64,000 nt of DNA from Obrimoposthia wandeli. Lineage: Eukaryota. The notes beneath the pieces were generated by a model. That model saw only the letters and a program-made list of their open reading frames with translations. It was not told where the DNA came from and ran no database searches. Position numbers and translations under genes: made by a program. This document shows positions 4,513-40,208 of the stretch, one piece after another. Where the stretch lies: NCBI GenBank assembly GCA_977020255.1, contig CDROCS010000122.1, positions 62,001 through 126,000 of the forward strand, read 5' to 3'. Each line of letters begins with the position of its first letter. Positions within the stretch are counted from its first letter, which is position 1.

Positions 4513-4570
4513 ATTATCTCTCTCTATTGGTCTGGTTGAAATTCATTATGCTCTGTAGCAATTTGCTACA

Positions 4571-9865: not shown

Positions 9866-9991
9866 GTTAATAAATCCTTTTGTAAGACGGTAAATAATAT
9901 ACCCATTCATTTTGCCACTATTCTGTAATGACACGCTACATAGCATTAGAGAGTAAATCACCAGAAACAAAATGAATGCGGTGTAGATAGC

Positions 9992-10018
9992 AGAAAGCCG
10001 CCCAAAAGGCGGCTTTCT
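9992..10018 (-). terminator. Terminator after ompH
   Basis: AGAAAGCCGCC-CAAAA-GGCGGCTTTCT. Confidence 0.8.
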
Positions 10019-10046
10019 TAAGAAGTTATCTTAGATTGAATCAATC

Positions 10047-11551: not shown

Positions 11552-13630
11552 ATGTTACACAGTCAGATTAAAAGTGATATCAAACAATGCTATGAGAACC
11601 TGGGAAACCAGCTGGATAACTTTATCCCTCGTCGTGCACAGAACTACCTTGTAGCTGAAATTGCTAAAACCCTGGCGGGTGAATATCATCAGAAACACCG
11701 AATGTTGGTGGGTGAAGCAGGTACAGGTATTGGTAAATCATTAGCCTACTTGATTGGAGGGATCCCCTTTGCACTTTTCAATAATAAAAAGTTATTGATT
11801 TCGACCGCAACGGTGGCATTACAAGAACAATTGATTAACAAAGATTTGCCATTGTTTAATCGTATTTACCCAAAAGAATTCAGCTTCATTCTGGCTAAAG
11901 GGCGTCAACGCTATTGCTGCAACCACAAATTGGAAGCCTGTTGCGCCACCGATAACGATCAACAAGTGGCATTATGGGAAGAAAAACCTAAAAAGTCGGA
12001 TTTAGATCTTTTAAAAAGAATGCTTAAAGCCACTCAAGACGGTAAATGGGATGGTGACCGCGACAGTTGGCCGACAACCATTCCAGATCGTGTCTGGCCA
12101 CAAATAATGGCCGATAAACACAGCTGCCATGCTGGTTTGCCCAAGCACCGTAGTTGTCCATTTGCGAAAGCGAGAGAACACTTAGACAAAGCCGATGTCA
12201 TTATTGCTAACCATGCTTTGCTAATGGCTGATATTGAATTAGGGGGGGGGGTGATTTTGCCCGAACCAGAGCAAACAATTTATGTCATCGATGAAGCGCA
12301 CCACCTGCCGAAGGTCGCAAGAGATTTCTCTTCAGCAGCATCCAGCTTAAAAGGCGCGGCAACTTGGTTAGAAAAGCTAAATCAAACCATTGGTAAACTG
12401 GCAGAACTGGCAGATTATAAAAAAGCCGCTCGCTTCCAAGATGCTATTTTAGAAAATATTCAGCACCTTATTCCAACATTACGGCAAGTAGCCAACAATG
12501 TTGATATCGGTATGTTCAGTAAAGACGGTATCTACCGTTTTGAACACGGTGAATTACCAGCATGGTTAGAACAAGAAGCAAAAGGCTGCAAAGATGCCAG
12601 TAAGAAAGCCTTACAATCATTAGGTAAAATACACGACTTAATTTCTGAACGTTTAAAAGATAACGAAATCCAGCAACGTTTAGGTGAACAAGCCCTTGCT
12701 GAATCAGGTGTTTATCTCCAACGTTTAGAAAATTTAGAAAAAGTATGGGCATTAATGGCACAGCCTAAAAAAGATAAAGGTGCCCCACTCGCACGTTGGA
12801 TAGAAAAGAACCCTGATAACGAAGGGGACTATATTATTCAGGTTTCACCACTTGAAGTCGGTTACCGTTTAGATCAGTTATTATGGAGCCGTGCAGCAGG
12901 TGCCATTTTGGTCTCTGCAACGCTGCGCGCTCTAAACCAATTTACTTACTTTTGTCGTCAAGTGGGTATCTATGAAATGGACAGCACGCGCTTTTTAGCC
13001 CTTGCTTCACCGTTTGATTATCAAAATAACGCTCGCTTAGTTATTCCAGCATTATCCCTTGAGCCTCAGGCGGATAAATTTACCGATCTATTAATCAAAA
13101 TATTACCAGAATATTTAGAAGGTGAAACCGCCAGTCTCGTGCTCTTTTCATCCTATTGGCAGATGAATAAAGTTGCCGATGAATTACGCCCACTCGCCAA
13201 GAAAAATAAATGGCAATTATTGGTACAAGGTGAAGAATCACGCCACATAACTCTAAAAAAACATAAAGATAATTGTAAAAACGGTAAACCTAGCATTTTA
13301 TTTGGCACCGGAAGCTTCTCTGAAGGGCTTGATTTGCCAGGCCATTTATTAAAAAACCTGATAATCACAAAAATCCCTTTCGGTGTACCGACCTCTCCGG
13401 TAGAAGAAGCCCATGCGGAATATATTGAAAGCTGTGGTGGTAATCCGTTTATGCAAATTTCAGTGCCTGAAGCCAGTAAAAAACTGATTCAATCTGTAGG
13501 TAGATTACTGCGTAAAGAAGATGACACAGGTCGAGTCGTACTGCTTGATCGTAGAATCATAAACCGTCGTTACGGCAAAGCCTTGTTGGATTCACTACCG
13601 CCATTTAAACGCGTTATAGAATATAATTAA
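11552..13630 (+). CDS. dinG: ATP-dependent DNA helicase DinG
   Basis: GEAGTGIGKS, DEAH, Fe-S Cys residues, SFSEGLD, QSVGRLLR. Confidence 0.97.
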   Translation: MLHSQIKSDIKQCYENLGNQLDNFIPRRAQNYLVAEIAKTLAGEYHQKHRMLVGEAGTGIGKSLAYLIGGIPFALFNNKKLLISTATVALQEQLINKDLPLFNRIYPKEFSFILAKGRQRYCCNHKLEACCATDNDQQVALWEEKPKKSDLDLLKRMLKATQDGKWDGDRDSWPTTIPDRVWPQIMADKHSCHAGLPKHRSCPFAKAREHLDKADVIIANHALLMADIELGGGVILPEPEQTIYVIDEAHHLPKVARDFSSAASSLKGAATWLEKLNQTIGKLAELADYKKAARFQDAILENIQHLIPTLRQVANNVDIGMFSKDGIYRFEHGELPAWLEQEAKGCKDASKKALQSLGKIHDLISERLKDNEIQQRLGEQALAESGVYLQRLENLEKVWALMAQPKKDKGAPLARWIEKNPDNEGDYIIQVSPLEVGYRLDQLLWSRAAGAILVSATLRALNQFTYFCRQVGIYEMDSTRFLALASPFDYQNNARLVIPALSLEPQADKFTDLLIKILPEYLEGETASLVLFSSYWQMNKVADELRPLAKKNKWQLLVQGEESRHITLKKHKDNCKNGKPSILFGTGSFSEGLDLPGHLLKNLIITKIPFGVPTSPVEEAHAEYIESCGGNPFMQISVPEASKKLIQSVGRLLRKEDDTGRVVLLDRRIINRRYGKALLDSLPPFKRVIEYN

Positions 13631-26607: not shown

Positions 26608-27897
26608 TTATTCTTTCAACAATCTTCCACTTTTATTGTACACGGTCGAGGTTTTTACAGGAGAAGAGATATACCTTTCTTTCGCAGCTAACAATGCAAA
26701 AAAACTCCACACCACACTGAGTCCAGCACAGATACTCAACGGTAATATCCAATTCCCTACTGATTCGTGCAACGCCCCCATTGCAATAGGTCCTGACGCC
26801 GCCAACAGATAACCACAGCATTGTGCCATACCTGATAGTGCCGCTGCTTGATGTGCATTTTGCGTGCGCAAACTGACGAATGCGAGCGCAAGAATAAAAC
26901 CACCACCCGCTCCCACACCAACTAACATTGCCCAAAGCATGGCAAGCGAAGGTATGGTGATCAATCCAACAATGCCGATGAAAACCAGTAAGGTCATGCA
27001 TACAGTCAACGCACGTTTGTCGTGAATTTTAGCCATCAAAGGGATCAAAATAATCGCCGGTACAGCCGTTGCCAATTGAAGCATGCCGTGGATAAATCCT
27101 GCTTCTTGGTGGCTATAACCATAGTCGATCAAAATAACGGGTAACCAACTGATAAAGATATACATCAGCAGCGAGTTCAACGCTAAGAAAATAGTAATAT
27201 GCCAAGCACTGGTTGAACGCCAAAGGTAGCTATGGCTATCAATCTCTGCTGTATCTGCTGTTGGGGCGCTGTGTTTTTTTAACTGTGGTAGCCAAAGCCC
27301 AATCGCAATCACTGGAAAAATAACAATTCCCCCCAAAGATAGTGACCAATCAGGGATGACAGTAATAGATAATGCATCTGCCATATTCATCACTGGAATC
27401 GCCAAACTCGCACTTAACGTTGAACCAACCCCCATCATCAATACATAAACAGCTGTAATCGTCGCCACCTTATTGGGGAAATCACGCTTCAATAAACTGG
27501 GCAGTAAAACATTCGCGATAGCAATACCGGCACCAATAATCACAGTGCCAATAAACAGCCAACTTGCAGAGCCCAACGATCTGACAATAATGCCCGTCAG
27601 TATTAACACCAGTGCAGCCATCAATGATTGTTCAAGCCCACGATTACGCCCCAGAATTGACGCAATAGGAGAGAAAAAAGCAAACGCTAACAATGGCAAG
27701 GTGGTTAACATACCAGCTTGCATTGCAGATAAATGTAACTGTTCGCGAATCACGTCTAGCAAAGGGCCAACACCCGTAATAGGGCTGCGTAAGTTAATTG
27801 ATATCAGTAAAATGCCCACAATAAGCAGAAAAGGTGTCGATGCTTTTGGGGACGTTGGTAATATTGGAGGCGTTGAAGATAAAAGCGGTTGTGGCAT
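26608..27897 (-). CDS. nimT: MFS transporter, CynX/NimT (YeaN) family
   Basis: NLRSPITGVGPLL, NVLLPSLLKRDFP, LSGMAQCCGYLLAASGP; divergent AraC gene. Confidence 0.8.
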   Translation of the reverse strand: MPQPLLSSTPPILPTSPKASTPFLLIVGILLISINLRSPITGVGPLLDVIREQLHLSAMQAGMLTTLPLLAFAFFSPIASILGRNRGLEQSLMAALVLILTGIIVRSLGSASWLFIGTVIIGAGIAIANVLLPSLLKRDFPNKVATITAVYVLMMGVGSTLSASLAIPVMNMADALSITVIPDWSLSLGGIVIFPVIAIGLWLPQLKKHSAPTADTAEIDSHSYLWRSTSAWHITIFLALNSLLMYIFISWLPVILIDYGYSHQEAGFIHGMLQLATAVPAIILIPLMAKIHDKRALTVCMTLLVFIGIVGLITIPSLAMLWAMLVGVGAGGGFILALAFVSLRTQNAHQAAALSGMAQCCGYLLAASGPIAMGALHESVGNWILPLSICAGLSVVWSFFALLAAKERYISSPVKTSTVYNKSGRLLKE

Positions 27898-27995
27898 AAA
27901 AATGCTCCTGTTATTCACAATAGCACTAGATTACTCTTCATTTTCTTTACCGTATTGGGCTATATTGACAATATATATCTATAAACAGTCATTAT

Positions 27996-28784
27996 ATGTT
28001 ACCTTTTCAGCCTTACTTTCCCGAATTCGACTCTGACGAGTACCCTCAAAAAGTTGTTGCTTTGCAACTTACCGGAGGTGAAAAAGAAGCCGAAACACCG
28101 TTTCATCAACACCGAAAATGTCAGATCGTGATCCCCTTAACAGGCTTCGTGAAATGCAAAATAGCAGATGCTATTTGGATGGTGCCCCCACATTGTGCAG
28201 TGTGGATCCCAAGCCACGTACCACATAGCAACAAGATCTCGGCTGACGCGAATGTCTGTATGCTTTTTATCGATCCTGATGCGATTGTTATGCCAGATCA
28301 GAGCTGCACGATTTCCATCTCACCATTGGTTCGAGAATTAATCGTTCACCTCACGATACAAGATCAACATTACTTACCCACCAGCCAAACGGCACGACTA
28401 GTGAATGTATTGATCGAGCAATTAACCACGATGCCGACAGAGCACTTTGATTTTCCTATTCCAGTCGAGCCAAGGCTGAATGCGATCGCTTTAAGATTAC
28501 TTGCTGATCCATCAGATCGACGAACGGTCAGTGAATGGGCTGAACAATTTGCAATGAGTGAACGTACCTTGGCACGCCTAGTCAAACAAGAAATTGGGTT
28601 AACGTTTGGAAAATGGCGCGGACAACTGCATATCGTAGTAGCACTACAAAAACTAGCGTCAGGCGATTCAGTACAGCGGATTGCAGATCACTTGGGATAT
28701 GAATCGGTTAGTGCGTTTATTACGTTCTTTAAGAAAACCCTCGGACGCCCTCCAAAACAATATATGAAAGGGCGTGAGGCATAG
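27996..28784 (+). CDS. nimR: AraC-family regulator, NimR (YeaM)-like
   Basis: Cupin (HQH, AIWMVP, VPHS) plus AraC HTH (LGYESVSAFITFFKK). Confidence 0.8.
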   Translation: MLPFQPYFPEFDSDEYPQKVVALQLTGGEKEAETPFHQHRKCQIVIPLTGFVKCKIADAIWMVPPHCAVWIPSHVPHSNKISADANVCMLFIDPDAIVMPDQSCTISISPLVRELIVHLTIQDQHYLPTSQTARLVNVLIEQLTTMPTEHFDFPIPVEPRLNAIALRLLADPSDRRTVSEWAEQFAMSERTLARLVKQEIGLTFGKWRGQLHIVVALQKLASGDSVQRIADHLGYESVSAFITFFKKTLGRPPKQYMKGREA

Positions 28785-28862: not shown

Positions 28863-30893
28863 TTAACCTTTAGATTTGATCCAATTATCAATACTTGTCT
28901 CTACCACTTCCATGGGTTGATCACCGTATTTAAGCAGCTGATCATGAAACTCTGCCCAGTCGAAGTCATTACCCAATTCAGACTGTGCTTTCTCCAGCAT
29001 TTCCTTGATCACCAAATAGCCAGATTTATACGAAACGGCCTGACCAACATACGCAGCATAACGGAAACTTTCCGATTCGATATCACCATCACCCAACGCA
29101 GAGTTACTACGCATATACACACGTGCCTCATCAATACTCCACCCTTTGGCATGAATACCAGTATCGACAGCCAAGCGCATATTTCGGAGTTGGGCTTCAT
29201 TCAAGCTACCAAAATATTGTAAGGCATTACACTCTTCGGCATCTTGATAAATCCCACCTTGGAATTCACCATAATTCAGATCCACTTTACACATACCGGT
29301 CGCATTAACAAAAGTTGGTTTACCCGCTTCATTCAACTCACCATATATACCCATTTCCATACCCAGCCATTCGGTATATAACGCCCACCCCTCGGCATAG
29401 GCGGTATACCAAACATTCTCAATATATTCCGGCTTATTGGCTGGTGGGTATTCAATAGAATAGGCATTTTGGAAGTGGTGACCCGGTGCTGCTTCATGCA
29501 ACAACAAAGTAGAGACATTCCACTTTTGCAGGCTGTAATCAGGATTGGTATTTAGGTTAAACTCATTGCCACCGTAAGAGCCCACCCCGTCATACAACTC
29601 ACGACTTGCAGGAACTGGTACAATGCTGTAATCAGTTTCAATTGGCTTAAAGTACTTAGCTACAACATCGTTAGCATCATTTTTAAATTTGTAGTAATCG
29701 AGCAATGCTGCCTCACAGGCAGATGGTACTGATGCAGATATACAGGCTTGCGCATACGGCGTACCCGTAATAGTCCGGTTATCTCGGCCATAGAAGAAAG
29801 TTTCACTATTCAGATAAGCAAAAAACTCAGAAAGATCAATATTGCCATTATCGTCCGCTAACGTGAACGTTCTATTTTGAACATTGTCGTCAGTATCTCG
29901 CCACTCGGCAGACACCGTTTTTCCGCGTTTCTCAACAATCAGTTTGGCGACTCGCTCCATCTCAGCTTTTGCATCTGCTACCAAATCTTCACCCAACTGG
30001 CTGAGCTCCATTGCTGGTTTACCCGTAGTACTGTTGCGATCCAGTTGCCACTGATACCATGCCTGCCCATTAGGTAAATCGCCCCAACCGATGTTTTTGT
30101 CGGCTGTAGAGCCGCTATCACTACCACTACCACGAGCGGTACTTATATAACTGGCGCTGCCTAGGTATTCTACCAATTTGTCTGTTGCCGTAGTCGCATC
30201 ATCCACTGCCCGTTGGTATTCAGCAATAAAAGCTGGCTCATAATCACGACTGTGACTATTGATGTCATTCAGACCGATTTTTAGTAAGGCAGATGCGCCT
30301 TTTGTACTCTCGACCAAGCGTTCAATCAGCACTTTAGGCAACTGTGAGCGCTCAACTTGACCCATTGAATACTGAGAATGTAAATTGTTAACCCAAGCTG
30401 TAAATTCACGAACAACCTGAACATGGCTTTTATAGGTTTCAACATCTTTTTGCTTAGCACCCGCCGTTTCTGCATTCCACTCAATATAGTTATAAAAATG
30501 GGTGATCGGAATCGTGAAATTACCAAAACGGGTATTAGGCAACGACGCTCCACGAATATCGATGTTTCGGTCAAAACGGAACGTGTCGTAATAAATTTTA
30601 TCTTCATCTGATAATGCACTGCGATCGAGCGCTTCAAGTTTATCTAGGTATAGCCTATCTACTGACTGTCGCGAAGAAGCCATCTGATCGGTTATCTGAC
30701 CAAACGTCGTATTATCGAGTATATCCATCGCCTCTTGGTAACCAGAAAATACGCCCCTCATATCAACAGCAACATCTGGTGTTAGTTTGGGCTGCTCAAT
30801 AATGTTGGTTTCGTCGTTACAACCTGCGAGCGTAGTTAACGCTAATATCGCCAGCGACAAAGAAGACAGGCGCATAGTTCCACTATGTTTCAT
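28863..30893 (-). CDS. DUF885 family lipoprotein (putative zinc metallopeptidase)
   Basis: Lipobox LAGC, HEAAPGHH, EGWALY, LVVDTG-like RLAVDTGIH, GQAVSYKSG. Confidence 0.88.
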   Translation of the reverse strand: MKHSGTMRLSSLSLAILALTTLAGCNDETNIIEQPKLTPDVAVDMRGVFSGYQEAMDILDNTTFGQITDQMASSRQSVDRLYLDKLEALDRSALSDEDKIYYDTFRFDRNIDIRGASLPNTRFGNFTIPITHFYNYIEWNAETAGAKQKDVETYKSHVQVVREFTAWVNNLHSQYSMGQVERSQLPKVLIERLVESTKGASALLKIGLNDINSHSRDYEPAFIAEYQRAVDDATTATDKLVEYLGSASYISTARGSGSDSGSTADKNIGWGDLPNGQAWYQWQLDRNSTTGKPAMELSQLGEDLVADAKAEMERVAKLIVEKRGKTVSAEWRDTDDNVQNRTFTLADDNGNIDLSEFFAYLNSETFFYGRDNRTITGTPYAQACISASVPSACEAALLDYYKFKNDANDVVAKYFKPIETDYSIVPVPASRELYDGVGSYGGNEFNLNTNPDYSLQKWNVSTLLLHEAAPGHHFQNAYSIEYPPANKPEYIENVWYTAYAEGWALYTEWLGMEMGIYGELNEAGKPTFVNATGMCKVDLNYGEFQGGIYQDAEECNALQYFGSLNEAQLRNMRLAVDTGIHAKGWSIDEARVYMRSNSALGDGDIESESFRYAAYVGQAVSYKSGYLVIKEMLEKAQSELGNDFDWAEFHDQLLKYGDQPMEVVETSIDNWIKSKG

Positions 30894-31304
30894 TGTGTAT
30901 TCCTTTTTATTTTTATAACCGTATCTCATTGATGAGTAATGCAATTCATCGGCAAGGCTAAAGGAATACATATATTGATATTGTGAAAGCATTCACGCTA
31001 TGACATGTCGACTTTTTATTCAACTACACGCTTATTCCTATTTATGTACTTTTATTCAATGCGCTAATAAGAAGGGCTGATAGAGCGATCACTTAATTGC
31101 ATTAATACAAAGGGCTGGTGCATATATAAAAATGAAGTCGAGCGAAGTAAAAAACCAAATTTTGAGTGGAGATCAAACTTATTGAATCAAATGTGAACTC
31201 AGTACAGATATTATTTCAATAAATCGAATAAAGCTGAGAAACCACAAATAGCAGGTAAAAAAAATGGCTTCCGAAGAAGCCACTATATTATCTAGTTATG
31301 ACGA

Positions 31305-32537
31305 CTAGTATTCCCAGTGCTCAAGACTGTGAGCGCCAGAGAATTGGTTAGGGAAATAATCTTCACATGTACCTTCACGCCATACATCGGCTGTTGCACA
31401 GTGTAGACCACCACCAAATGCGTAAGCATCTCGTAAATCAACCGGAATGACATCAAAGCCAAGCTTATCGAATTGATCCATTTGTGCTGTTTCAGAGGCT
31501 TCAACACAAACCGTTTTATGATCTAAGATCAACGTATTCATCGACAACCAAGTGCTTGAGTAACAAAGCGCTGGTGGGTTATCCCACGCTGGGCTGACCG
31601 CTTCCACAATTTCCCAATCATTTTTCTCGAAGATCTCACGCTGACCTTTAAATAATGGACGATTAGGGTTCAGCAACATTAAGCCAGGACGTAGCGGACA
31701 GAAGGTCGCATCAATATGAATTGGATGGTTATCTTCAAAGCTTAGCGTGTGAACACGGTAACCTTGAGATTCATACTTACGCTTTATCCAACGAATACCC
31801 GCTAAGTTGGTAGTAAGACCGTGTTGCACAAAAATATCTTTACCTAAACGCATTACATCAGCGGCATCGAACAGAATATCAGTTTCTTTGGTGCTGTACT
31901 CTTTACGCAGTGAGCGCTCCATAGTTTCTGCATCAGACAAGTATTCATAAGCTGCCACATAGTCCATACGGAAGCTATCATCAGACAAACGTGGACGTGG
32001 TGCTTGCTCGATCATACAATTTGGATCTGATTCAAAATACTCACGCATCAAATCAACGTAAGCTAAATATTCAAAGTAACGGCTACGGAAGCTCATTGGT
32101 GCCATCAGCATGCTCTTACCCATAGTAAGTAGACAGTCACGTGGTGGCATTACACCAAAACCAGAACTGATGCTGAAATCAGGTGTGGTAATGCGCTCAT
32201 GCCAGTCTACTGCCCCTGGGCGGTCAACAATGATGTTGCGATCTTCTAAAATCTTCGCAAAACCATTCAAACATTCATTGGCACGTTCGATAGATTCTTG
32301 AGTACGACGACCTGCTTTACCCCCCCTCATTGGAGAACCCGCTGGAATTTTTTCATTACTTGCCGGGCAAGCTTCCGGAATATGTTGATTATCCGCTATA
32401 CCAACAATAACGTGACGAAGTGGATCGAAGTCATTATAAGATTCAACATGCAGACCTTGTCTTACATAAGGTACACCAGAATCTTTTCTTTCTGGTGGTA
32501 AAGAGGCATTAGGGTATAGATCGTTAGAAATACTCAT
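31305..32537 (-). CDS. L-arginine amidinotransferase (AGAT/StrB1 family)
   Basis: PRD, FDAAD, HID and GGGLHC catalytic motifs, WLSMN; GGAG RBS before ATG 32537. Confidence 0.93.
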   Translation of the reverse strand: MSISNDLYPNASLPPERKDSGVPYVRQGLHVESYNDFDPLRHVIVGIADNQHIPEACPASNEKIPAGSPMRGGKAGRRTQESIERANECLNGFAKILEDRNIIVDRPGAVDWHERITTPDFSISSGFGVMPPRDCLLTMGKSMLMAPMSFRSRYFEYLAYVDLMREYFESDPNCMIEQAPRPRLSDDSFRMDYVAAYEYLSDAETMERSLRKEYSTKETDILFDAADVMRLGKDIFVQHGLTTNLAGIRWIKRKYESQGYRVHTLSFEDNHPIHIDATFCPLRPGLMLLNPNRPLFKGQREIFEKNDWEIVEAVSPAWDNPPALCYSSTWLSMNTLILDHKTVCVEASETAQMDQFDKLGFDVIPVDLRDAYAFGGGLHCATADVWREGTCEDYFPNQFSGAHSLEHWEY

Positions 32538-33035
32538 TACAAATCTCCAATAGAATGAATATAAATCAAGAAGTCGTGCTTCCATATATTATTAATGTTG
32601 TCACTTTATATTCGAGTAATAATATGCCAGCCATTAACCATGATAAATATTATTAATAATCATTTGTTTATTCTGATTAGCAGTTATATTCGCTGCTCTT
32701 CAATAACACTAATATCGCGCTAAAAGCCGATCGATAATAGTCATTTAATGCTAACAACTGACTGTTCCCTGCTCTGATGTTGTTTTTATTATATAACCAA
32801 TAAAAAAATCATTGCGAGTGCTGATAAACAATGCAATTCATTACAAAATATTCACATGCCGCATAATTATTCACAAATCAGTCCTTTAAATAGACGGTAA
32901 TTATTACTCCTACTCCATAGTGGCATCGCATTGATACTATTTATAACTGTGTAACATCACATTTATACCTTGATTAGTTGGCATTCATTTTTTTCAAGGG
33001 TAAACATAATGCAATACGACAAGGGAGGTACGATT

Positions 33036-33947
33036 ATGTGTCAACGTGTTATTGCCAACACCCCTAAATTTCTGATGTTCGACTTACAAAAAATAGAAGA
33101 AACCGAACACATGATATTTGGAGCAGACTATATATTAATACGTCCTAAAACAGCGGGATGCACACTACATTTAGCCAATACCCACTACCAGTTAAGAGTA
33201 GGGCAACTGATATTACTCGCACCATTTAACCCATTCAGGCTATCACTAGACCAGCATCAAAAGGTGCCAACCGACTGTGATACATTGCATTTTAGATTAA
33301 ATGCAATGGGACAAACATTCGTTGATAGTGTTCAATTCTATACCATCAAAACCATGCTAGAGCAGTCACGCAGTGGTACTCTATTCGAAGGTCAGGGTAT
33401 TTCTGATATCCACCATTTATTAGATAAGATGGAAAATTCCTTTGAGTTTTCTCAAGTGCTAAATTTGCTTGGTTTGCTTGAAAAATTATCAGCAATGATA
33501 CCAGCCCGCTACCTTGCTAATAACCGTTTTGAAGTAAATAACATTAAACGCACAGAAAACCGCGTCCATATTGCACAAGAATATATTGCGAATAATTTAG
33601 CAGAACAATTATCTGTTGCATTGGTAGCAGAACAGCTTCATATGGCTGATAGTACTTTTTCGCGGTTTTTTCATGCTAACCTTGGGGTCACATTTCGGCA
33701 ATATGTTATTGAACAACGCGTTAGGCAAGCGGCGAGGTATTTAGTCACGACAGATTGGACTATTGCTCATATCGGCTCGGAAGTAGGCTTTTCATCTTTA
33801 TCAAACTTTAATTCAAAGTTTAAAAGCCTATTACGTGCTACGCCACGAGAATACCGTGCGAACCATGTTGATATGCGTAAAGATATTGAAAGCAGTCGAG
33901 CTGTCGAAGGTCAAATACAAAAACAGCTATCAGATACGATGCTATAA
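33036..33947 (+). CDS. AraC-family regulator divergent from the amidinotransferase
   Basis: C-terminal double HTH (VGFSSLSNFNSKFK...TPREYR); GGAGG RBS. Confidence 0.92.
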   Translation: MCQRVIANTPKFLMFDLQKIEETEHMIFGADYILIRPKTAGCTLHLANTHYQLRVGQLILLAPFNPFRLSLDQHQKVPTDCDTLHFRLNAMGQTFVDSVQFYTIKTMLEQSRSGTLFEGQGISDIHHLLDKMENSFEFSQVLNLLGLLEKLSAMIPARYLANNRFEVNNIKRTENRVHIAQEYIANNLAEQLSVALVAEQLHMADSTFSRFFHANLGVTFRQYVIEQRVRQAARYLVTTDWTIAHIGSEVGFSSLSNFNSKFKSLLRATPREYRANHVDMRKDIESSRAVEGQIQKQLSDTML

Positions 33948-34052
33948 CTGCCACCGACGGCTTTTCAACAAATAGTTTTTTATAACTAGATTTGACTAAA
34001 TAGCGTTGAGTATTTTAAAAGAGAGTAACAATAACTTGTTACTCTCTTTTTA

Positions 34053-35513
34053 TTAGTGAGAAGGGAATGAAACAGTTGCTGGTTGGTGATTAAAATATTT
34101 AGCGACTAACCAATACGTACCACAAGCAAGTAGTGAAGAATAAATTGGCGCCTCAACCCAGCCCAAGTTGAATTGTAAAAAGAGTAAACAACCCGAACTA
34201 AATCCGATGACCATCGAAAATAACGCCGCATATATATTGGCAGGCACAAAATGAGCAAGCAATGTAGGGGCAACCAATGCAGCCATTAATGTTCCTGAGC
34301 CCAATATTGCCAACATAGACAGCATAAAAGGAGGAGCAAGCAACATAAGCACAAACCCCGTTCCACCTAATAACCACACCGCACTTCGGTTCAATATAAG
34401 TAACGATTTTTCTGATAACCGACAATTGGGCCAAATAGCCTGACGTAAATCGTGTGATACAGAACCCGCAATCGCATGCAAAACAGAATTAGCTGTCGAC
34501 TTCATCGCAAATAAAATAAACAGTGTGACAACCGAAGACACAGAAGGGGATAAAAAATTGGCGAGGAAGGTCGGCATCGCTTCATCTGGTGTGGCGAGTC
34601 CAGGCACTTTTAAGCGGGTGTATAATCCCGCTAAGGGCACGAGGCTAAGCAAACAGGCAATGGGCGTCATATATGCAGCCACATGGTGTAGCTTGGTGGT
34701 TTTTGCTAACGCCATAAACCGAACAGACATATAAGGTAATGTTGCACTGTAGATAAATGCGTATGGCAATACCATGAGTACATGCCAAACCGAGGAACCA
34801 TAGGGGCCAGAATCAGTCGGAGCAAGTAATTCAGGATCAATCGCATTTAAACCTGAAATCAGCTCACTGGGTGACATATCGGAAAAAATAGTCACAACAA
34901 TAATAAGTGCTGATACGCACATTCCGACCACCATAAAAGCATCGGTAAATGCGACAGCTGCTAACCCACCAATCGAGGTATATAAAATAATAATACCCAC
35001 CATTAATAATGCAGCCGTATCTTGATCGATACCTAACCATTGTCCAGCCAGTAATCCAAGTGCCTTTATTTGCCCCACCAAGAAAACCAACAATAAAATA
35101 ATAGTAATAATAGCAGCAAAGGCTTGAGTGAAACGCTTAACAATTTCGGGGCCTTCGTGACTACGGGCAATGTATTCAGGAATAGTAAAACTGCCCATTT
35201 GTTCAGCTTTCTGATGTAAAAAACGCGCACAAAATAAGACGGCAAAGACCATCGCTGGTGCAAAAAAGAAGTTACCAACGAGTTCAATTGCACCGTATTT
35301 ATAGGCAACACCTGGGGATCCCATGAATCCCCAGCCTGAAAACCCTGTCGCAACAATCGTCGCAGCACCAATGAAAGGGCCAAGGCAATTAGCGGCTAAT
35401 AAAAAACCACCTTCGCCATCACCTGTTTTCATGATTTTATTACTGTACAGCGCGAGTCCTACCATGATGCTCACCGTCACCAATAGGAGCACCCAGTTAA
35501 ATGAGGTGATCAT
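34053..35513 (-). CDS. Sodium:solute symporter (SSS, PutP-like)
   Basis: SGWGFMGSPG, TIPEY, YTSIGGLAAVAFTD, AMKSTANS; about 13 TM helices. Confidence 0.9.
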   Translation of the reverse strand: MITSFNWVLLLVTVSIMVGLALYSNKIMKTGDGEGGFLLAANCLGPFIGAATIVATGFSGWGFMGSPGVAYKYGAIELVGNFFFAPAMVFAVLFCARFLHQKAEQMGSFTIPEYIARSHEGPEIVKRFTQAFAAIITIILLLVFLVGQIKALGLLAGQWLGIDQDTAALLMVGIIILYTSIGGLAAVAFTDAFMVVGMCVSALIIVVTIFSDMSPSELISGLNAIDPELLAPTDSGPYGSSVWHVLMVLPYAFIYSATLPYMSVRFMALAKTTKLHHVAAYMTPIACLLSLVPLAGLYTRLKVPGLATPDEAMPTFLANFLSPSVSSVVTLFILFAMKSTANSVLHAIAGSVSHDLRQAIWPNCRLSEKSLLILNRSAVWLLGGTGFVLMLLAPPFMLSMLAILGSGTLMAALVAPTLLAHFVPANIYAALFSMVIGFSSGCLLFLQFNLGWVEAPIYSSLLACGTYWLVAKYFNHQPATVSFPSH

Positions 35514-35525
35514 CGTAGCCTCCTG

Positions 35526-36461
35526 TTAATGTTCTAGTTGACTATTTTTGAGAGCAACACGCTTCTTGGTCATACTAATAACAATCTCGCCCATGCCGCC
35601 GCCAATCACTAAGATGCCACCGATACTTTGAAGTAACGTGAGTGATTCACCAAACATCGCAATACCAATGCCAGCTCCAACTACCGTTTCAAGGTATGAC
35701 ACACACGCTAACTCAGCTGCTTTCAGGTGTTTAGCTGCAATAGTCAGTAGAGTCAGGGCACCAAACCCAATGAAGAACCCCATCGAAATTAACCAGATCC
35801 AAGAGCTGGTATTCATATCAGCAAGCGAAGGAGGTTTAACGACAAAACATACCCCAATAGCCACAGCACCAAACAAGAAGTTGAAGAAAGAGCGTGAGTC
35901 TGAGCTTACATCAGTACGATAGCGACTAAAGAACAAATACAAACCGTAGCCTACCCCTGAAGCCAGCCCAAGCATATCACCGATGAAGTTCTCTTTTGAG
36001 AAAGACAGGGATACAGTTAACCCAGAAGTCGCACTGTAATTAATAATCCCGATGATAAATAAACACCCAATGAATACTGCTGTTAATAGTGAAGCAGTCA
36101 ACTTAGATATTTTTTCTTTAAGAAAAATAGCCGCTAAAATGGTCGAGAACACCGGTCCGGTGTAGATAAGAAATACCGCATTGGCTAAAGTTGTGTATTG
36201 AGTAGAAGAAACATAAGCCGCTAGACATAACCCCAAACAGGCACCGCTTGCAATAACCGTTGGTGTTATTTTGGTGGCTTTTATCAGTGATGTTTTACCT
36301 TGATAAAACATCAGACCTAAAATACAAATCGCGCCAACAGTCATGCGGGTAAATGCGATAACATCACCGCTAGTATTAATATTTCTGGCAAACAATCCAA
36401 CACACCCCATCAGGGCTGCCGAAACTATCATCGTGGAATAGCCCAACGTTTTGGTATTCAT
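35526..36461 (-). CDS. DMT/EamA-family transporter
   Basis: Two EamA repeats, 10 TM, LANAVFLIYTGP. Confidence 0.88.
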   Translation of the reverse strand: MNTKTLGYSTMIVSAALMGCVGLFARNINTSGDVIAFTRMTVGAICILGLMFYQGKTSLIKATKITPTVIASGACLGLCLAAYVSSTQYTTLANAVFLIYTGPVFSTILAAIFLKEKISKLTASLLTAVFIGCLFIIGIINYSATSGLTVSLSFSKENFIGDMLGLASGVGYGLYLFFSRYRTDVSSDSRSFFNFLFGAVAIGVCFVVKPPSLADMNTSSWIWLISMGFFIGFGALTLLTIAAKHLKAAELACVSYLETVVGAGIGIAMFGESLTLLQSIGGILVIGGGMGEIVISMTKKRVALKNSQLEH

Positions 36462-36610
36462 GATTTACTCCTTTGATTATTGTCATCAGGATGATCGCAG
36501 AGCATTCCACCGCCAGTAATTTGGTAATAACCGTACACCAGCATTACCACCACACATAGAGCAACATTAGCGAGTATAAATACATCGACAGACCAATATC
36601 CTGTAAGCAT
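36458..36610 (-). CDS. 50-aa single-TM small protein coupled to the DMT gene; not in the ORF track
   Basis: MLTGYWSVDVFILANVALCVVVMLVYGYYQITGGGMLCDHPDDNNQRSKS; its TGA overlaps the DMT ATG (ATGA); AAGGGA RBS. Confidence 0.75.
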   Translation of the reverse strand: MLTGYWSVDVFILANVALCVVVMLVYGYYQITGGGMLCDHPDDNNQRSKS

Positions 36611-36915
36611 CTTCATTCCCTTTTCAAGGCTAAAATAACAACAATGAACATGTTGTAATTGACATTTATATTGATTGAGTACTGACTCAATAACTAGTCA
36701 AAACCTGCCGTCTACTTGCTAATTACTGCTCAATAGTTGAAAACACGATCAAAAAAGGCAACCCGAAGGCTGCCTTATTGAAGAAGTAAAGGTCACGATT
36801 AAGCTAGCGATTCAATACGGTTTTCATATCTATTAATTGGTTAAATTATCTTTTTTTACTTAATCACTAATACTGGTACTGTTGATTTAAAGCTGACGAT
36901 TCCTAGTTTATTCAT

Positions 36916-37632
36916 TTATGAACAAACAACCTTACCTTGCTTTAAATGAATAGTATGATCTGCTAATTGTTGTGCTTGTCGTATTGAATGAGAGACCATT
37001 ACAACAGTGTAACGGGTGGCTAATTTAACAATCAGTGTTTCTATGTGGGCTTCCGTTAATGGATCTAATGATGCCGTTGGTTCATCAAGAAGTAATATTT
37101 CTGGTTCAAGGGCAAGTGTTCGTGCCAGACAAAGGCGTTGTTGTTGACCTCCTGAAAGCACATCTGCGGGCATCGCTAATCTATTTTTGACATCATGCCA
37201 CAAAGCAGCATCGCTTAAGGCCGCATAGGCTCGATCCTGAGCTTCTGCCCCCGCGACACCACAAACCACTTTCAACGGTAAGAGTAAATTATCTAAAATA
37301 CTGCCAGGTAGCAGTTGTGGATGTTGAAAAACCATACCTACTTTGCGACGTAGTTTTGGCAGCTGACCCTTATTAAGGTCATGAACATCAGTTACTTTTC
37401 CATCAAGATGCAACTTAATCTCACCTTGCGAATGACAGCCATCGAAGCAGTCATTTAGGCGATTAATGGCTCTAAGTAACGTTGTTTTACCAGAACCCGA
37501 TGGCCCAGTAAGCAGATGAATTTTATTTTTAAACAACTCGATGTTTATATTGCTAATAACGGGCTTATTTCCAAAAGAAATCGTCAAGTCGGATATTGTG
37601 CCTGCCAATTGTGAAGACATATTTGAATGCAT
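36916..37632 (-). CDS. pstB: PstB-like ABC ATPase
   Basis: GPSGSGKT, LSGGQQQRL, LLLDEP. Confidence 0.8.
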   Translation of the reverse strand: MHSNMSSQLAGTISDLTISFGNKPVISNINIELFKNKIHLLTGPSGSGKTTLLRAINRLNDCFDGCHSQGEIKLHLDGKVTDVHDLNKGQLPKLRRKVGMVFQHPQLLPGSILDNLLLPLKVVCGVAGAEAQDRAYAALSDAALWHDVKNRLAMPADVLSGGQQQRLCLARTLALEPEILLLDEPTASLDPLTEAHIETLIVKLATRYTVVMVSHSIRQAQQLADHTIHLKQGKVVCS

Positions 37633-37633
37633 A

Positions 37634-38494
37634 TTAGGTTCGCCTTATAGAGGGTCGCAATAAAAGGCTTGCGGCAGTAAAAATAGTGGCAGTGATACAC
37701 AAAAGGGTGATTGCTGCACCAAAAGCCATTTGAAGCTCAGATTGACTTTGATATTGGGCACTGTAATAGAAAATAGTAAATGGCAAGGCCTCGTAACGTT
37801 CAAATACCCCACCAGGAAGACCTGCATTTACAACAACGCCTGTTAGCATGATCACCGCTGTATCTTCAGCAGCACGACCCGTTGCCAACATTACACCGCC
37901 AATAATACCTTTTGATGCTTTCGGCAGCAGAACCCTTCGGATGGCTTGCCAATGAGTCATGCCAAGAGCAAGAGCCGTTATTTCAAGTGAAGATGGTAAT
38001 GCTTTTAGTGCGGTACGAGTTGCGACCGCTAAGTACGGAATAATTAATAGTGCAAGGCTAAACGCAGAGACAATTAAACACGTATTCGCAGAAGGTAACA
38101 GCCCCTTTCTGAGAAATAAGATCAACGTAAAACCGAACAGACCCATTAGTATCGAAGGGATGCCAGCAAGAATATCAATGCCAAGCGCAAGAAGTCGCTT
38201 AAACCGTGATTCAGAGCTTATAGCAAGCCATATTCCTGTGGCGACTCCGGGAACAAGAGCCAAAGACAAAGAAAGAAAAACGACGGTTATTGTGCCTACG
38301 CAGGCAGGCCAAATTCCATCCCATATAGGTTCAAGCCCAAGTATCCCTTTTATTACATCGGTATCGCCAAAAAACAACGATAGACTAAATGCAGGGGCAC
38401 CTTGTTTAATGGTGAACCCAAGCAGTAACGCTAAACTTCCTAATAACCCGACGGTACAAATAAGGCACCAAAAATGGAATAACCGTTCTTTCAT
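37634..38494 (-). CDS. pstA: PstA-like permease
   Basis: LAGIPSILMGLFG, EAA-like loop, GRAAEDTA. Confidence 0.8.
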   Translation of the reverse strand: MKERLFHFWCLICTVGLLGSLALLLGFTIKQGAPAFSLSLFFGDTDVIKGILGLEPIWDGIWPACVGTITVVFLSLSLALVPGVATGIWLAISSESRFKRLLALGIDILAGIPSILMGLFGFTLILFLRKGLLPSANTCLIVSAFSLALLIIPYLAVATRTALKALPSSLEITALALGMTHWQAIRRVLLPKASKGIIGGVMLATGRAAEDTAVIMLTGVVVNAGLPGGVFERYEALPFTIFYYSAQYQSQSELQMAFGAAITLLCITATIFTAASLLLRPSIRRT

Positions 38495-39357
38495 CTCATG
38501 CCCTTTAAAGAACGCTTGTAATGCACATGTTCTATTTTCCTGATGAGTAGTGTAACGCTGACACTGATAGTAAGAAGAAGTAACCCAGAGGCAAATAAAG
38601 AGTTATACGTTGCGCTACCGTTCTCAGTTGCTAAAACAAGCCCGATGTGGGCTGTTAATGTTCGGACTGAATCAAAAACGCTGCTTGTTAATTGTGGTGC
38701 GTTCCCCGCGAGCATAAGTGGCAAAAGAGTATCACCTATAGCCCGGCTAAAACCGAGTAACGCCGCTGCAGCCATCGCTTTGGTCGCGTTAGGTAAAATG
38801 ATATACAACACTGTTTGTATATCGCTAAACCCCATCGCCGTGGCGTTAAGATGGATTTGCGAGGCCACTTCTCGACAATGGGTATCTAATATCATAATCA
38901 TTACAGGCAATATCAACATAACAACCATAACGGCAGTGGCAAGTATGCTGTAGCCTGAACCATACATGAAAGTTTCTCTGAGTAGCGGCACAAGCAAAAA
39001 AACGGCAGCAATTCCATACACAACGGTCGGAATGCCTGACATCATTCTAATGACCCGCCGAATCCATTTAGTCGCTTTTTTATAACGTGTAAGTTGGAAA
39101 AATCCGGCTACACCAATAGCAATTGGAAAGGCCAGAATTAATGACATTAATGCAACCATTCCAGAGCCTGCGATCATGGGCAGAATACCAAAATCCCCCT
39201 GCTCAGGCTGCCAATTAAGAGAGAGTACCGAAACATCTGAATGAAAGAATAACGGTAGCGCAAACCAGAATAGAAAACCGAATAGTAAGGCAATAAGTGC
39301 GAACACTGTGGCGCTTAATACCAACAGTATTCGCTCGGCTGTGAAAGTAGATGCCAT
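38491..39357 (-). CDS. pstC: PstC-like permease
   Basis: SGIPTVVYG, SRAIGDT, TLTAHI. Confidence 0.8.
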   Translation of the reverse strand: MASTFTAERILLVLSATVFALIALLFGFLFWFALPLFFHSDVSVLSLNWQPEQGDFGILPMIAGSGMVALMSLILAFPIAIGVAGFFQLTRYKKATKWIRRVIRMMSGIPTVVYGIAAVFLLVPLLRETFMYGSGYSILATAVMVVMLILPVMIMILDTHCREVASQIHLNATAMGFSDIQTVLYIILPNATKAMAAAALLGFSRAIGDTLLPLMLAGNAPQLTSSVFDSVRTLTAHIGLVLATENGSATYNSLFASGLLLLTISVSVTLLIRKIEHVHYKRSLKGMR

Positions 39358-39374
39358 TGACTTATTGATTCTAT

Positions 39375-40208
39375 TTATTGCATTTTCAGTGGTATATAAC
39401 CCGATGCGCGTACATACTTCGCACCCTGTGGGCTATAAATAAAATCAACAAATGTACGAACTAAGCCTTCCGGTTCACCTTTAGTATTCATAAACAATTT
39501 ACGGACAATAGGATACTCACCAGAAGCACAAGCTTCGTTCGTTGGATGTACTTGATCTAAAGTTGGTGCTTTTACTGTATTGTCGATATAGCCGACACTG
39601 CTGTAACCAATAGCACCGGGATCACGAGCAATGGCAGTTTTCATTGCCCCATTTGATGGAACAACATTCGCATGATTCACCATCGATATGTTCTGCAATA
39701 ATTTAGTGGCGAAAACAGCACGAGTACCACTCGCTTCATCACGCGTAAAAATGTTGATTGAGCGGTCATCCCCACCCAGTTGCTGCCAGTTGTTAATTTT
39801 ACCTGAATAGATATCAATAACTTGCTGGGTTGTTAATGATTGAATTGGGTTGGCTGGATTGATAATAGTTGCAACACCATCAATAGCAAAAGGGAGTGAT
39901 ACTAACCCATAAGCAGCCTCACTGGGCTTTAATGCTCGACCTGTATTCCCTATATCGACTAACCCTTTGGCAACTTGTTGGGCGCCGACCCCTGAACCAC
40001 CACCCGCAATAGTAATACGGATATCGCTATTTGCTTTCATAATCGCTTTGGCTGCTTGTTTCATTACGGGAATATGCGCAGTACCTCCAGCTATATTAAT
40101 CGTGCCAGAAAGCCCTTCAAATTTATCGAGATCTGTTGCTTGGGTCAGTAATGGCACAAAGCACACACCACAAAGAAGTAGTCTAATAACACTGGATTTA
40201 CACCACAT
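39375..40208 (-). CDS. pstS: PstS-like substrate-binding protein
   Basis: Signal peptide, GGGSGVG, RDEASGTR, SNG, IGYSS. Confidence 0.8.
   Translation of the reverse strand: MWCKSSVIRLLLCGVCFVPLLTQATDLDKFEGLSGTINIAGGTAHIPVMKQAAKAIMKANSDIRITIAGGGSGVGAQQVAKGLVDIGNTGRALKPSEAAYGLVSLPFAIDGVATIINPANPIQSLTTQQVIDIYSGKINNWQQLGGDDRSINIFTRDEASGTRAVFATKLLQNISMVNHANVVPSNGAMKTAIARDPGAIGYSSVGYIDNTVKAPTLDQVHPTNEACASGEYPIVRKLFMNTKGEPEGLVRTFVDFIYSPQGAKYVRASGYIPLKMQ

What the first reader, a model, noticed from the sequence alone, without database searches (positions are those of the whole stretch)
31305..36610. Stand-alone amidinotransferase locus with AraC regulator, Na+ symporter, DMT transporter and small membrane protein
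Seen: an AGAT-family enzyme with the full Asp-His-Cys triad motifs is divergent from an AraC gene, beside a small-ORF/DMT/SSS operon. No methyltransferase, NRPS or PKS is nearby. Known: characterised bacterial amidinotransferases (StrB1, CyrA, SxtG, AmtA) sit in natural-product clusters, and the reaction is reversible. Inference: an undescribed guanidino-compound salvage or exchange module, for example importing guanidinoacetate or a related animal-derived guanidine and moving the amidino group onto ornithine to make arginine, or making and exporting a guanidino metabolite.
Basis: partly seen in the sequence, partly recalled or inferred. Interest (0 to 1): 0.78.

Follow-up and report, generated by a model that had tools for sequence, protein, structure and literature searches.

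The report
Guanidino-compound uptake and transamidination module
A marine Photobacterium-like bacterium carries a conserved five-gene unit that most likely imports a guanidino compound from animal hosts (probably guanidinoacetate) and moves its amidino group onto ornithine to make arginine; in other bacteria the same enzyme sits in operons that burn arginine and glycine for ATP, which points to an energy-yielding pathway I found no description of.

Summary
The enzyme (31305-32537, minus strand) is a true AGAT-family amidinotransferase: E 1e-74 to human AGAT, catalytic Asp/His/Cys and substrate-binding residues aligned, and a predicted fold that matches 1jdw. It lies divergent from an AraC regulator and next to a small-ORF/DMT/SSS operon. 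No PKS, NRPS or methyltransferase lies in the 64 kb.

The five genes travel together in 9 other Vibrionaceae species, with different flanks. A tandem AraC-type operator occurs only twice in the window, once before each of the two transcription units.

Relatives in five phyla pair the enzyme with the same SSS plus its conserved 33-52-aa peptide, with the same DMT, or with a ProP-like MFS. Many place it inside arcA-arcB-arcC operons, next to glycine-reductase B subunits, or after glyA-folD.

Best reading (about 0.6): a guanidino donor, probably guanidinoacetate, plus ornithine gives arginine plus glycine. Relatives then burn both products. The window itself has no arc or grd genes, so the fate of arginine in this organism is open.

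I found no published description of this pathway. A published proteome shows the enzyme and ArcABC co-induced in Actinobaculum in urinary catheter biofilms.

The parts
31305..32537 (-). AGAT-family amidinotransferase, 410 aa from M17 (the mechanical ORF runs on to 32585)
   Evidence: E 1e-74 to human AGAT, with the catalytic and substrate-binding residues aligned. The predicted fold matches 1jdw at TM 0.84 by target. The start is set by the conserved MSISND N-terminus and a GGAG site.
31263..31284 (-). Terminator-like hairpin followed by a T run, just after the amidinotransferase stop
   Evidence: Consensus scan, 9-pair stem.
32738..32772 (-). Tandem AraC-type operator (GCA-N18-GCA-N5-Y-N2-CTA), about 200 nt upstream of the amidinotransferase start
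   Evidence: One of only two matches in the 64 kb. Present upstream of the enzyme gene in all 10 Vibrionaceae loci. Lies in the most conserved block of the intergenic alignment.
32970..33947 (+). AraC/XylS-family regulator, divergent from the enzyme gene. The likely start is 33036 (303 aa). The N-terminal domain belongs to no known family.
   Evidence: HTH_18 and HTH_AraC match residues 220-297 only. An AGGGAGG site precedes the ATG at 33036. Orthologues are 59-83% identical and lie in the same position in 9 loci.
34017..34050 (.). Perfect 15-nt inverted repeat between the convergent ends of AraC and SSS; probable two-way terminator
   Evidence: Inverted repeat I5, 100% complementary, 4-nt loop.
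34053..35513 (-). Sodium:solute symporter (SSS, PanF/PutP-like), the candidate importer of the guanidino donor
   Evidence: PF00474 E 6e-28; TIGR00813. Orthologues 39-54% identical sit directly after the enzyme gene in Endozoicomonadaceae, Bacillota and Synergistota; the same gene order with an SSS also occurs in Brevinema, identity not measured. An unrelated SSS is only 24% identical to an enzyme-linked one from Bacillota.
35526..36461 (-). DMT/EamA transporter, the candidate exporter of the de-amidinated product
   Evidence: Two EamA stretches. Orthologues 34-66% identical sit directly after the enzyme gene in Kistimonas, Craterilacuibacter, 10 Actinomycetota loci and Cutibacterium acnes.
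36458..36616 (-). 52-aa single-pass membrane peptide, first gene of the transporter operon; probable accessory subunit of the SSS
   Evidence: An N-terminal motif M-x-TG-[YS]-W-x-x-D-x-F-I followed by a hydrophobic stretch is conserved in 9 Vibrionaceae loci. The same kind of peptide (strict motif in four loci, a looser form in four; two further 40-48-aa genes seen as calls only) lies directly upstream of the SSS (or of DMT-SSS) in loci L011, L013, L033, L043, L047, L053, L081, L083, L088, L089 and L090. It has no Pfam or NCBIfam family.
36695..36729 (-). Second copy of the tandem AraC-type operator, 79 nt upstream of the small ORF
   Evidence: The other of the two matches in the window. Exact-pattern matches lie at the same place in 5 of 9 Vibrionaceae loci, and the rest differ slightly in the distal half-site.
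36755..36776 (-). Terminator of the upstream pstB-like gene; marks the upstream boundary of the transporter operon
   Evidence: 9-pair GC-rich stem followed by TTTTT.

Best explanation
The locus is a regulated uptake-and-transamidination module for a guanidino compound. The most likely compound is guanidinoacetate from animal tissue or excreta; creatine or another guanidino acid is possible.

Proposed steps:
1. The SSS, together with its small membrane peptide, imports the compound with Na+.
2. The cytoplasmic amidinotransferase runs in the direction opposite to creatine synthesis. It transfers the amidino group to ornithine, giving arginine and the free amine (glycine if the donor is guanidinoacetate).
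3. The DMT exports or exchanges that product.
4. The divergent AraC regulator switches on both promoters through a shared tandem operator.

In many relatives the arginine is then consumed by the arginine deiminase pathway, which yields ATP and regenerates ornithine, so ornithine acts catalytically. The glycine is consumed by a glycine-type reductase or by SHMT.

Shown here: gene identities, conservation of the module, the shared operator, and the cross-phylum gene linkage.
Inferred: the direction of the reaction, the donor, the role of each transporter, and the fate of arginine in this particular genome, where no arc or grd genes lie within 64 kb.
For: 1. The enzyme is a bona fide AGAT relative. 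The Cys/His/Asp triad and the Asp170, Asp305, Arg322 and Ser354/355 equivalents are retained, which fits arginine/ornithine as one substrate pair.
2. The five genes are kept together in 9 other Vibrionaceae loci while the flanking genes differ.
3. The tandem operator occurs only before the two transcription units in the window, and it is conserved in orthologous loci.
4. Orthologous SSS plus small peptide, DMT, or ProP-like MFS genes sit directly beside the enzyme gene in five phyla and in three separate branches of the enzyme tree.
5. The enzyme gene lies inside or beside arcA/arcB/arcC in 11 Actinomycetota loci, Crenobacter, Fretibacterium, Shewanella marina (enzyme 88% identical to the window's), L081, L083-85 and L089.
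6. Glycine-reductase B subunits (GrdX, GrdE/G-like, and a GrdB-like protein with an in-frame UGA) are adjacent in L011, L081/82, L083-85 and L087, and lie 7 kb away in L090. glyA-folD precede the arc-enzyme operon in Actinomyces and Schaalia. Sinks for both arginine and glycine in one operon make sense only if the enzyme produces them.
7. A published proteome of Actinobaculum massiliense shows the amidinotransferase and ArcA, ArcB and ArcC all more than 8-fold more abundant in urinary catheter biofilms than in vitro (PMC6314084). The gene order in that species is arcA-arcB-arcC-enzyme-DMT-MFS-TetR (L073).
8. From established biochemistry: AGAT transamidination is freely reversible, so irreversible arginine deimination would pull it towards arginine.
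Against: - No enzyme activity, transport or regulation has been measured for any member of this group.
- The window has no arc or grd genes. In this genome the arginine could simply be assimilated.
- Many marine Alpha- and Gammaproteobacteria carry the enzyme with no informative neighbours, so the family may have other roles.
- The window's clade sits on a long branch (1.27 changes per site) and could have a shifted specificity.
- The specificity of the linked Grd subunits is unresolved. They score nearest to the sarcosine models but below every curated cut-off.
- DMT proteins are often exporters, which would also suit a biosynthetic reading.
- The operator pattern was derived from the two sites it then 'finds'. 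Only its absence elsewhere and its conservation in other species count as evidence.
Confidence: 0.6

Rival explanations
1. Biosynthesis and export. The enzyme runs in the canonical AGAT direction, arginine plus an imported acceptor such as glycine, lysine, taurine or GABA. It makes a guanidino metabolite (guanidinoacetate, homoarginine, taurocyamine and the like) that the DMT exports as an osmolyte, signal or toxin precursor.
For: All characterised family members (AGAT, CyrA, SxtG, StrB1, AmtA, HsvA) work in this direction (one search hits and established literature). EamA/DMT proteins are frequently amino-acid exporters. An SSS of the PutP/PanF type could import the acceptor.
Against: There is no downstream tailoring gene, PKS, NRPS or methyltransferase. 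In relatives the gene is embedded with arginine deiminase and glycine reductase or SHMT, which would compete for both substrates of a forward reaction. Loci with Grd adjacent to the enzyme gene lack the DMT (L011, L081, L083), as expected if the DMT disposes of glycine. L090 keeps the DMT with a Grd gene 7 kb away.
Confidence: 0.15
2. Same transamidination-to-arginine mechanism but a different donor. Candidates are creatine (giving sarcosine), 4-guanidinobutyrate, 3-guanidinopropionate, homoarginine or taurocyamine. In that case guanidinoacetate is not the physiological substrate in this Photobacterium-type clade.
For: The window's clade is separated by a long, fully supported branch and differs near the 300-loop: NHPIH against DPYPIH in the main family and DPNPMH in human AGAT. 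The linked Grd subunits score best against the sarcosine-reductase models. Fish muscle, a typical Photobacterium habitat, is rich in creatine (general knowledge).
Against: Those Grd scores are far below the sarcosine cut-offs (560-592 against 780). glyA-folD linkage in Actinomyces points to glycine. Both enzyme clades share the same kinds of neighbours. Creatine is not a known AGAT substrate. Tissierella creatinophila, which ferments creatine and has no annotated creatinase (PMC5364220), did not appear among the top 120 listed hits for the Tissierellaceae enzyme. Its Grd locus lacks the enzyme and carries an SSS that is not of the enzyme-linked type, 24% identical.
Confidence: 0.2
3. No functional unit. 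The enzyme/AraC pair and the transporter operon are unrelated neighbours.
For: They are separate transcription units. In this window the downstream pathway genes are missing.
Against: The five genes stay together in 9 further species with different flanks. The same transporter families are adjacent in five phyla. The two units share an operator.
Confidence: 0.03

Closest known systems
L-arginine:glycine amidinotransferase (AGAT/GATM; PDB 1jdw)
   Same: Full-length homology (about 37% identity in the structural alignment; E 1e-74). The Cys-His-Asp triad and the Asp170, Asp305, Arg322 and Ser354/355 equivalents are retained, and the predicted pentein fold is the same.
   Different: AGAT is a eukaryotic biosynthetic enzyme that makes guanidinoacetate for creatine. 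Here the bacterial enzyme is linked to importers and, in relatives, to catabolic sinks for arginine and glycine, which implies the reverse physiological direction. It also has an extra 27-residue N-terminus and a changed 300-loop.
Bacterial natural-product amidinotransferases (CyrA, SxtG, StrB1, AmtA, HsvA)
   Same: Same family. HsvA, SxtG and StrB1 are the next best sequence and structure matches.
   Different: Those enzymes sit in PKS, NRPS, aminoglycoside or toxin clusters and donate amidino groups from arginine. No such genes occur here.
Agmatine deiminase pathway (AguA, putrescine carbamoyltransferase, carbamate kinase, agmatine/putrescine antiporter)
   Same: By analogy, it is a route that turns the guanidino group of a non-arginine compound into carbamoyl phosphate and ATP, coupled to dedicated transport.
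   Different: It deiminates agmatine directly. The module proposed here first moves the amidino group to ornithine, so that the ordinary arginine deiminase pathway does the work and ornithine cycles.
Hydrolytic guanidino-acid catabolism (creatinase, guanidinoacetase, guanidinobutyrase GbuA, guanidinopropionase GpuA)
   Same: The presumed substrates and the amine products are the same.
   Different: These ureohydrolase or creatinase enzymes release urea and conserve no energy from the amidino group. They belong to unrelated protein families.
SSS transporters with small accessory membrane proteins (for example YhdT with PanF, YjcH with ActP, the VC_2705-type small subunit)
   Same: A short membrane peptide is encoded immediately upstream of, and co-inherited with, an SSS permease.
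   Different: The peptide here matches no Pfam or NCBIfam family. In Vibrionaceae and in the Kistimonas-type loci (L013, L090) a DMT gene is inserted between the peptide gene and the SSS gene.

Membership tests
AGAT-type amidinotransferase (guanidino-group modifying enzyme superfamily) | Full-length sequence similarity to characterised amidinotransferases | tested here: met
   phmmer E 1.2e-74 to human AGAT over residues 44-411; HsvA 4e-62, SxtG 4e-54, StrB1 5e-45.
AGAT-type amidinotransferase (guanidino-group modifying enzyme superfamily) | Catalytic Cys-His-Asp triad (human C407, H303, D254) | tested here: met
   C396, H290 and D240 align to them and are invariant in 17 sequences.
AGAT-type amidinotransferase (guanidino-group modifying enzyme superfamily) | Residues binding the guanidino and alpha-amino-acid moieties (human D170, D305, R322, S354/S355; their roles are recalled from the AGAT structure papers) | tested here: met
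   D150, D292, R309 and S343/S344 align and are invariant.
AGAT-type amidinotransferase (guanidino-group modifying enzyme superfamily) | Pentein (five-fold beta/alpha propeller) fold | tested here: met
   AlphaFold model with mean pLDDT 69.6. Foldseek top hits are 2jdx, 4jdw and 1jdw, E about 1e-36, TM 0.84 by target.
AGAT-type amidinotransferase (guanidino-group modifying enzyme superfamily) | Transamidination activity | not testable with these tools
   Needs an enzyme assay.
Natural-product cluster amidinotransferase (CyrA/SxtG/StrB1/AmtA type) | Neighbouring PKS, NRPS, aminoglycoside or tailoring genes | tested here: not met
   The neighbours are AraC, SSS, DMT, DUF885 and a Pst-like ABC system. 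No PKS, NRPS or methyltransferase occurs in 64 kb.
Arginine-deiminase-coupled operon (as in the Actinomycetota, Bacillota and L081 relatives) | arcA, arcB and arcC adjacent to the amidinotransferase gene | tested here: not met
   tblastn with ADI, OTC and carbamate kinase finds nothing in the window. The feature is met in about 18 related loci.
Sodium:solute symporter family (PF00474) | Full-length match to the SSF profile | tested here: met
   PF00474 residues 37-437, E 6e-28; TIGR00813 E 4e-32, below the curated cut-offs of the PanF and PutP equivalogs.
DMT superfamily, EamA type | Two EamA repeats | tested here: met
   PF00892, two stretches, E 1e-26.
AraC/XylS regulators | C-terminal double helix-turn-helix | tested here: met
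   HTH_18 E 2e-20 and HTH_AraC E 4e-13. The N-terminal 190 residues match no known ligand domain.

The most novel reading that the evidence does not exclude
AGAT-family enzymes define a widespread, undescribed energy-conserving pathway in host-associated and marine bacteria. Guanidinoacetate (or creatine) is imported by a dedicated two-component SSS. Its amidino group is passed to a catalytic pool of ornithine, and the resulting arginine is fermented through the arginine deiminase pathway to ATP. The released glycine (or sarcosine) feeds a selenoprotein reductase for a second ATP. The window's five-gene unit would be the mobile front end of this pathway.
Probability: 0.45. Interest if true: 0.85.

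Novelty: new variant of a known kind. Interest (0 to 1): 0.76.

Why it matters
- Guanidinoacetate and creatine are abundant in urine, muscle, fish flesh and animal secretions. The known bacterial routes hydrolyse them to urea without gaining energy from the amidino group.
- A transamidination shunt into the arginine deiminase pathway would be a new way to gain ATP and ammonia from these compounds. It would give a first physiological role to a large family that NCBI currently mislabels 'serine/threonine protein kinase'.
- The family occurs in oral Actinomyces, Cutibacterium acnes, Fretibacterium, gut Eggerthellaceae, the urinary bacterium Actinobaculum and fish-spoilage Photobacterium.
- It would reinterpret a published proteomic observation that was attributed to polyketide synthesis (PMC6314084).
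- It would define a new small subunit for an SSS transporter.
- It bears on alkali production in dental plaque, on the fate of creatine and guanidinoacetate in the gut, and on seafood spoilage.

Tried and rejected
- Pfam on the enzyme gave no significant hit (ADI, E 0.058). Identity rests on the PDB sequence search and the fold search.
- A riboswitch in the long 5' leader, for example a guanidine class: Rfam found nothing relevant.
- A mobile-element signature around the module: no flanking repeats, although the flanks differ between species.
- arc and grd genes in the window: absent. Earlier scan notes on this genome mention no arginine deiminase or glycine reductase. The rest of the genome could not be searched.
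- The idea that the enzyme fills the missing creatinase step of Tissierella creatinophila (PMC5364220): not supported. The organism did not appear among the top 120 listed hits. Its Grd locus holds no amidinotransferase, and its SSS is only 24% identical to the enzyme-linked type.
- Deciding glycine versus sarcosine specificity of the linked Grd subunits from NCBIfam scores and source names: inconclusive.
- Metatranscriptome contigs from marine sediment (four studies) cover pieces of all five genes at 90-99% identity. Because they are contigs, they prove neither transcription nor co-transcription.
- Neighbourhoods in Granulosicoccaceae, Arenicellales, Poriferihabitaceae and most Rhodobacterales hold housekeeping genes only.
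- Eight literature searches found no prior description of an amidinotransferase linked to the arginine deiminase pathway.
- Protein P0002 (Psychromonas sp. CD1) could not be located in the contig index.


Full report
**Observation.** The window holds the following genes on the stated strands:
- an amidinotransferase ORF, 31305-32585 (-);
- a divergent AraC-family gene, 32970-33947 (+);
- a three-gene operon convergent with AraC: a 52-aa ORF (36458-36616), a DMT/EamA transporter (35526-36461) and a sodium:solute symporter (34053-35513), all on the minus strand.

The enzyme gets no significant Pfam hit (ADI, E 0.058). A sequence search of the PDB gives E 1.2e-74 to human L-arginine:glycine amidinotransferase over nearly its whole length, followed by HsvA, SxtG and StrB1.

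From that alignment, human D254, H303 and C407 correspond to D240, H290 and C396. The residues I recall as binding the substrate in AGAT (D170, D305, R322, S354/355) correspond to D150, D292, R309 and S343/344. All are invariant in a 17-sequence alignment. An AlphaFold model (mean pLDDT 69.6) finds the AGAT structures first, with TM 0.84 by target.

The true start is M17 at 32537. Every orthologue begins MSISND after a GGAG site. AraC probably starts at 33036, behind an AGGGAGG site.

No PKS, NRPS or methyltransferase lies anywhere in the 64 kb. The flanks are a DUF885 protein and a Pst-like ABC system.

**Is it a unit?** A scan of one genome per species returned 80 loci. The nearest are Photobacterium species (93% to P. 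kasasachensis), so the window is Photobacterium-like.
- In 9 Vibrionaceae loci the same five genes occur in the same order. Identities to the window are: enzyme 90-93%, SSS 77-90%, DMT 78-95%, AraC 59-83%, small ORF 41-85%.
- The genes outside the five differ from species to species. The unit therefore moves or is retained as a block.
- Alignment of the two promoter regions across species shows one strongly conserved block in each. Both blocks contain two half-sites 21 nt apart of the form GCA-N18-GCA-N5-Y-N2-CTA, reminiscent of AraC I1/I2 sites.
- That pattern occurs exactly twice in the window: at 32738-32772 before the enzyme gene and at 36695-36729 before the small ORF. The expected number is 0.30.
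- In the other loci it lies before the enzyme gene in all 10 Vibrionaceae loci and before the small ORF in 5 of 9. There is one stray match in the remaining 76 loci.
- The pattern was derived from these sites, so what counts is its conservation and its absence elsewhere. It supports common control by the adjacent regulator.
- Terminator-like hairpins bound the units at 31263-31284, 34017-34050 and 36755-36776.

**The small ORF is real.** Its N-terminal motif (M-x-TG-[YS]-W-x-x-D-x-F-I, then a hydrophobic helix) recurs in several places:
- in the 9 Vibrionaceae loci;
- upstream of DMT-SSS in Kistimonas and in L090;
- directly upstream of the SSS in Parendozoicomonas, L081/82, three Bacillota loci, Fretibacterium, L083-85, Brevinema (L088) and L089.

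The strict pattern matches L011, L043 and L081/82. L013, L033, L047 and L053 carry a looser form of the motif. For L083/85, L088, L089 and L090 I saw only a called 39-48-aa gene in the same place and did not read its sequence.

It has no Pfam or NCBIfam family. It behaves as an accessory subunit of this SSS subfamily. Members of that subfamily are 39-54% identical across phyla, whereas an unrelated SSS is only 24% identical to an enzyme-linked SSS from Bacillota.

**What the relatives say about function.** De novo clustering of neighbours, family scans and further contigs gave these contexts:
- Actinomycetota (Actinomyces, Schaalia, Mobiluncus, Propioniciclava, Actinobaculum): arcA-arcB-arcC-enzyme-DMT-MFS(ProP-like)-TetR. 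In Actinomyces and Schaalia this is preceded by glyA-folD.
- Cutibacterium acnes: enzyme-DMT-MFS-TetR.
- Craterilacuibacter and Crenobacter: enzyme with DMT, MFS, arcB and arcC.
- Fretibacterium: enzyme-peptide-SSS-arcA.
- A Bacillota lineage seen in 426 index blocks: GntR-enzyme-peptide-SSS-GrdX-GrdE/G-like-GrdB-like(UGA)-arcA(-arcB).
- L089: arcA-arcB-enzyme-peptide-SSS.

Within the window's own enzyme clade (15 rows, 100% support):
- Shewanella marina has enzyme-arcA.
- Parendozoicomonas and L087 have Grd subunits-AraC-enzyme.
- L081 has Grd subunits, AraC, SSS with peptide, enzyme, ArgR, a YfcC-type basic-amino-acid antiporter, arcA and arcB in 14 kb.

The enzyme is thus repeatedly placed with an importer and with enzymes that consume arginine (the arginine deiminase pathway) and glycine (a glycine-type reductase, or SHMT). 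AGAT chemistry is reversible (established biochemistry). The reading that fits all contexts is: guanidino donor + ornithine -> arginine + amine. The arginine deiminase pathway then pulls the reaction and regenerates ornithine.

The DMT is absent where Grd lies directly beside the enzyme gene (L011, L081, L083) and present in most loci without Grd. L090 has both, with Grd 7 kb away. This fits a role in exporting the amine product, but it is inference.

SSS and MFS appear to be alternative importers.

**Independent experimental hint.** In Actinobaculum massiliense the 'L-arginine:glycine amidinotransferase' (locus 01650) and ArcA, ArcB and ArcC (01647-01649) were all more than 8-fold more abundant in urinary catheter biofilms than in vitro. 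The authors tentatively tied them to a polyketide pathway (PMC6314084). The gene order in L073 shows they form one operon. Urine is a guanidinoacetate-rich fluid (general knowledge).

**Donor.** Guanidinoacetate is favoured for three reasons: it is the cognate AGAT pair, the enzyme is linked to glycine reductase, and it is linked to glyA-folD. Creatine (giving sarcosine) is not excluded. The linked Grd subunits score nearest to the sarcosine models, but far below their cut-offs, and source names are mixed. The window's clade sits on a long branch with a changed 300-loop.

I tested whether the enzyme could fill the missing creatinase step of Tissierella creatinophila (PMC5364220). It did not appear among the top 120 listed hits, and its Grd locus lacks the enzyme.

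**Limits.**
- The window has no arc or grd genes, and I could not search the rest of the genome. Earlier scan notes mention an arginine biosynthesis operon and an agmatine deiminase locus with a broken carbamate kinase on other pieces of this genome. In this organism the arginine may therefore be assimilated rather than fermented.
- Many marine free-living or sponge-associated bacteria carry the enzyme with uninformative neighbours.
- RNA-library contigs from marine sediments cover parts of all five genes but prove neither transcription nor co-transcription.
- No riboswitch was found.

**Novelty.** Eight full-text searches found no description of an amidinotransferase coupled to the arginine deiminase pathway or to glycine reductase. 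NCBI names the family 'serine/threonine protein kinase'.

The parts are known families. The combination, the implied reverse physiological direction, and the SSS small subunit are new. I rate it a new variant of a known kind, of high interest, with the mechanism about 60% likely.

Noticed in passing
proteins P0002, P0023, P0067, P0092, P0153 and others: NCBI and UniRef name this amidinotransferase family 'serine/threonine protein kinase'. This is a systematic misannotation that hides the family from keyword searches. JGI calls it glycine amidinotransferase.
   Followed up: partly
window 36916-40208 (-): This is a pstSCAB-like ABC transporter. Its PstB, PstA and PstC scores are well below the curated equivalog cut-offs (for example PstB 239 against 343 bits), and only the PstS-family subfamily model passes. 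It may be a second, divergent phosphate-type or related oxyanion system.
   Followed up: no
window 26608-28784: A second divergent pair lies just beyond the DUF885 gene: an MFS transporter (436 aa, -) and an AraC-family regulator (262 aa, +). The MFS is not of the ProP-like type linked to the enzyme elsewhere.
   Followed up: partly
window 28863-30992 (-): A 709-aa DUF885 protein lies directly downstream of the amidinotransferase gene. It is not found next to the module in any of the other loci, so it is probably unrelated.
   Followed up: partly
L001, L003-L009, L012 versus the window: The five-gene module has different flanking genes in different Photobacterium species, even in the closest relative (enzyme 93% identical). 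No repeats or transposase mark its borders in the window.
   Followed up: partly
L038:1875-4222 and L019:2151-4342: In Actinomyces and Schaalia, glyA (SHMT) and folD lie directly upstream of arcA-arcB-arcC-amidinotransferase-DMT-MFS-TetR. This suggests that glycine from the transamidination is fed into one-carbon and serine metabolism.
   Followed up: partly
L091 (Tissierella creatinophila LTDM01000004.1) 7085-12607: The creatine and creatinine fermenter has a 33-aa ORF plus an SSS of a different subfamily, divergent from GrdX-GrdE/G-like-GrdB-like genes. The genome paper reports no creatinase gene, so how it splits creatine remains open.
   Followed up: partly
L081:5508-5846 and 7286-7837: A Y1 transposase and a resolvase gene are interspersed in the Grd-AraC-SSS-enzyme-arc cluster of this metagenomic contig. 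This hints that the cluster was assembled or moved by mobile elements.
   Followed up: no
L002 (Photobacterium aquae) 2245-9085: Here the enzyme gene is followed by an AraC gene, an ArtJ/ArtI-type arginine ABC transporter, a second AraC paralogue and a ProP-like MFS, in place of the small-ORF/DMT/SSS operon.
   Followed up: partly
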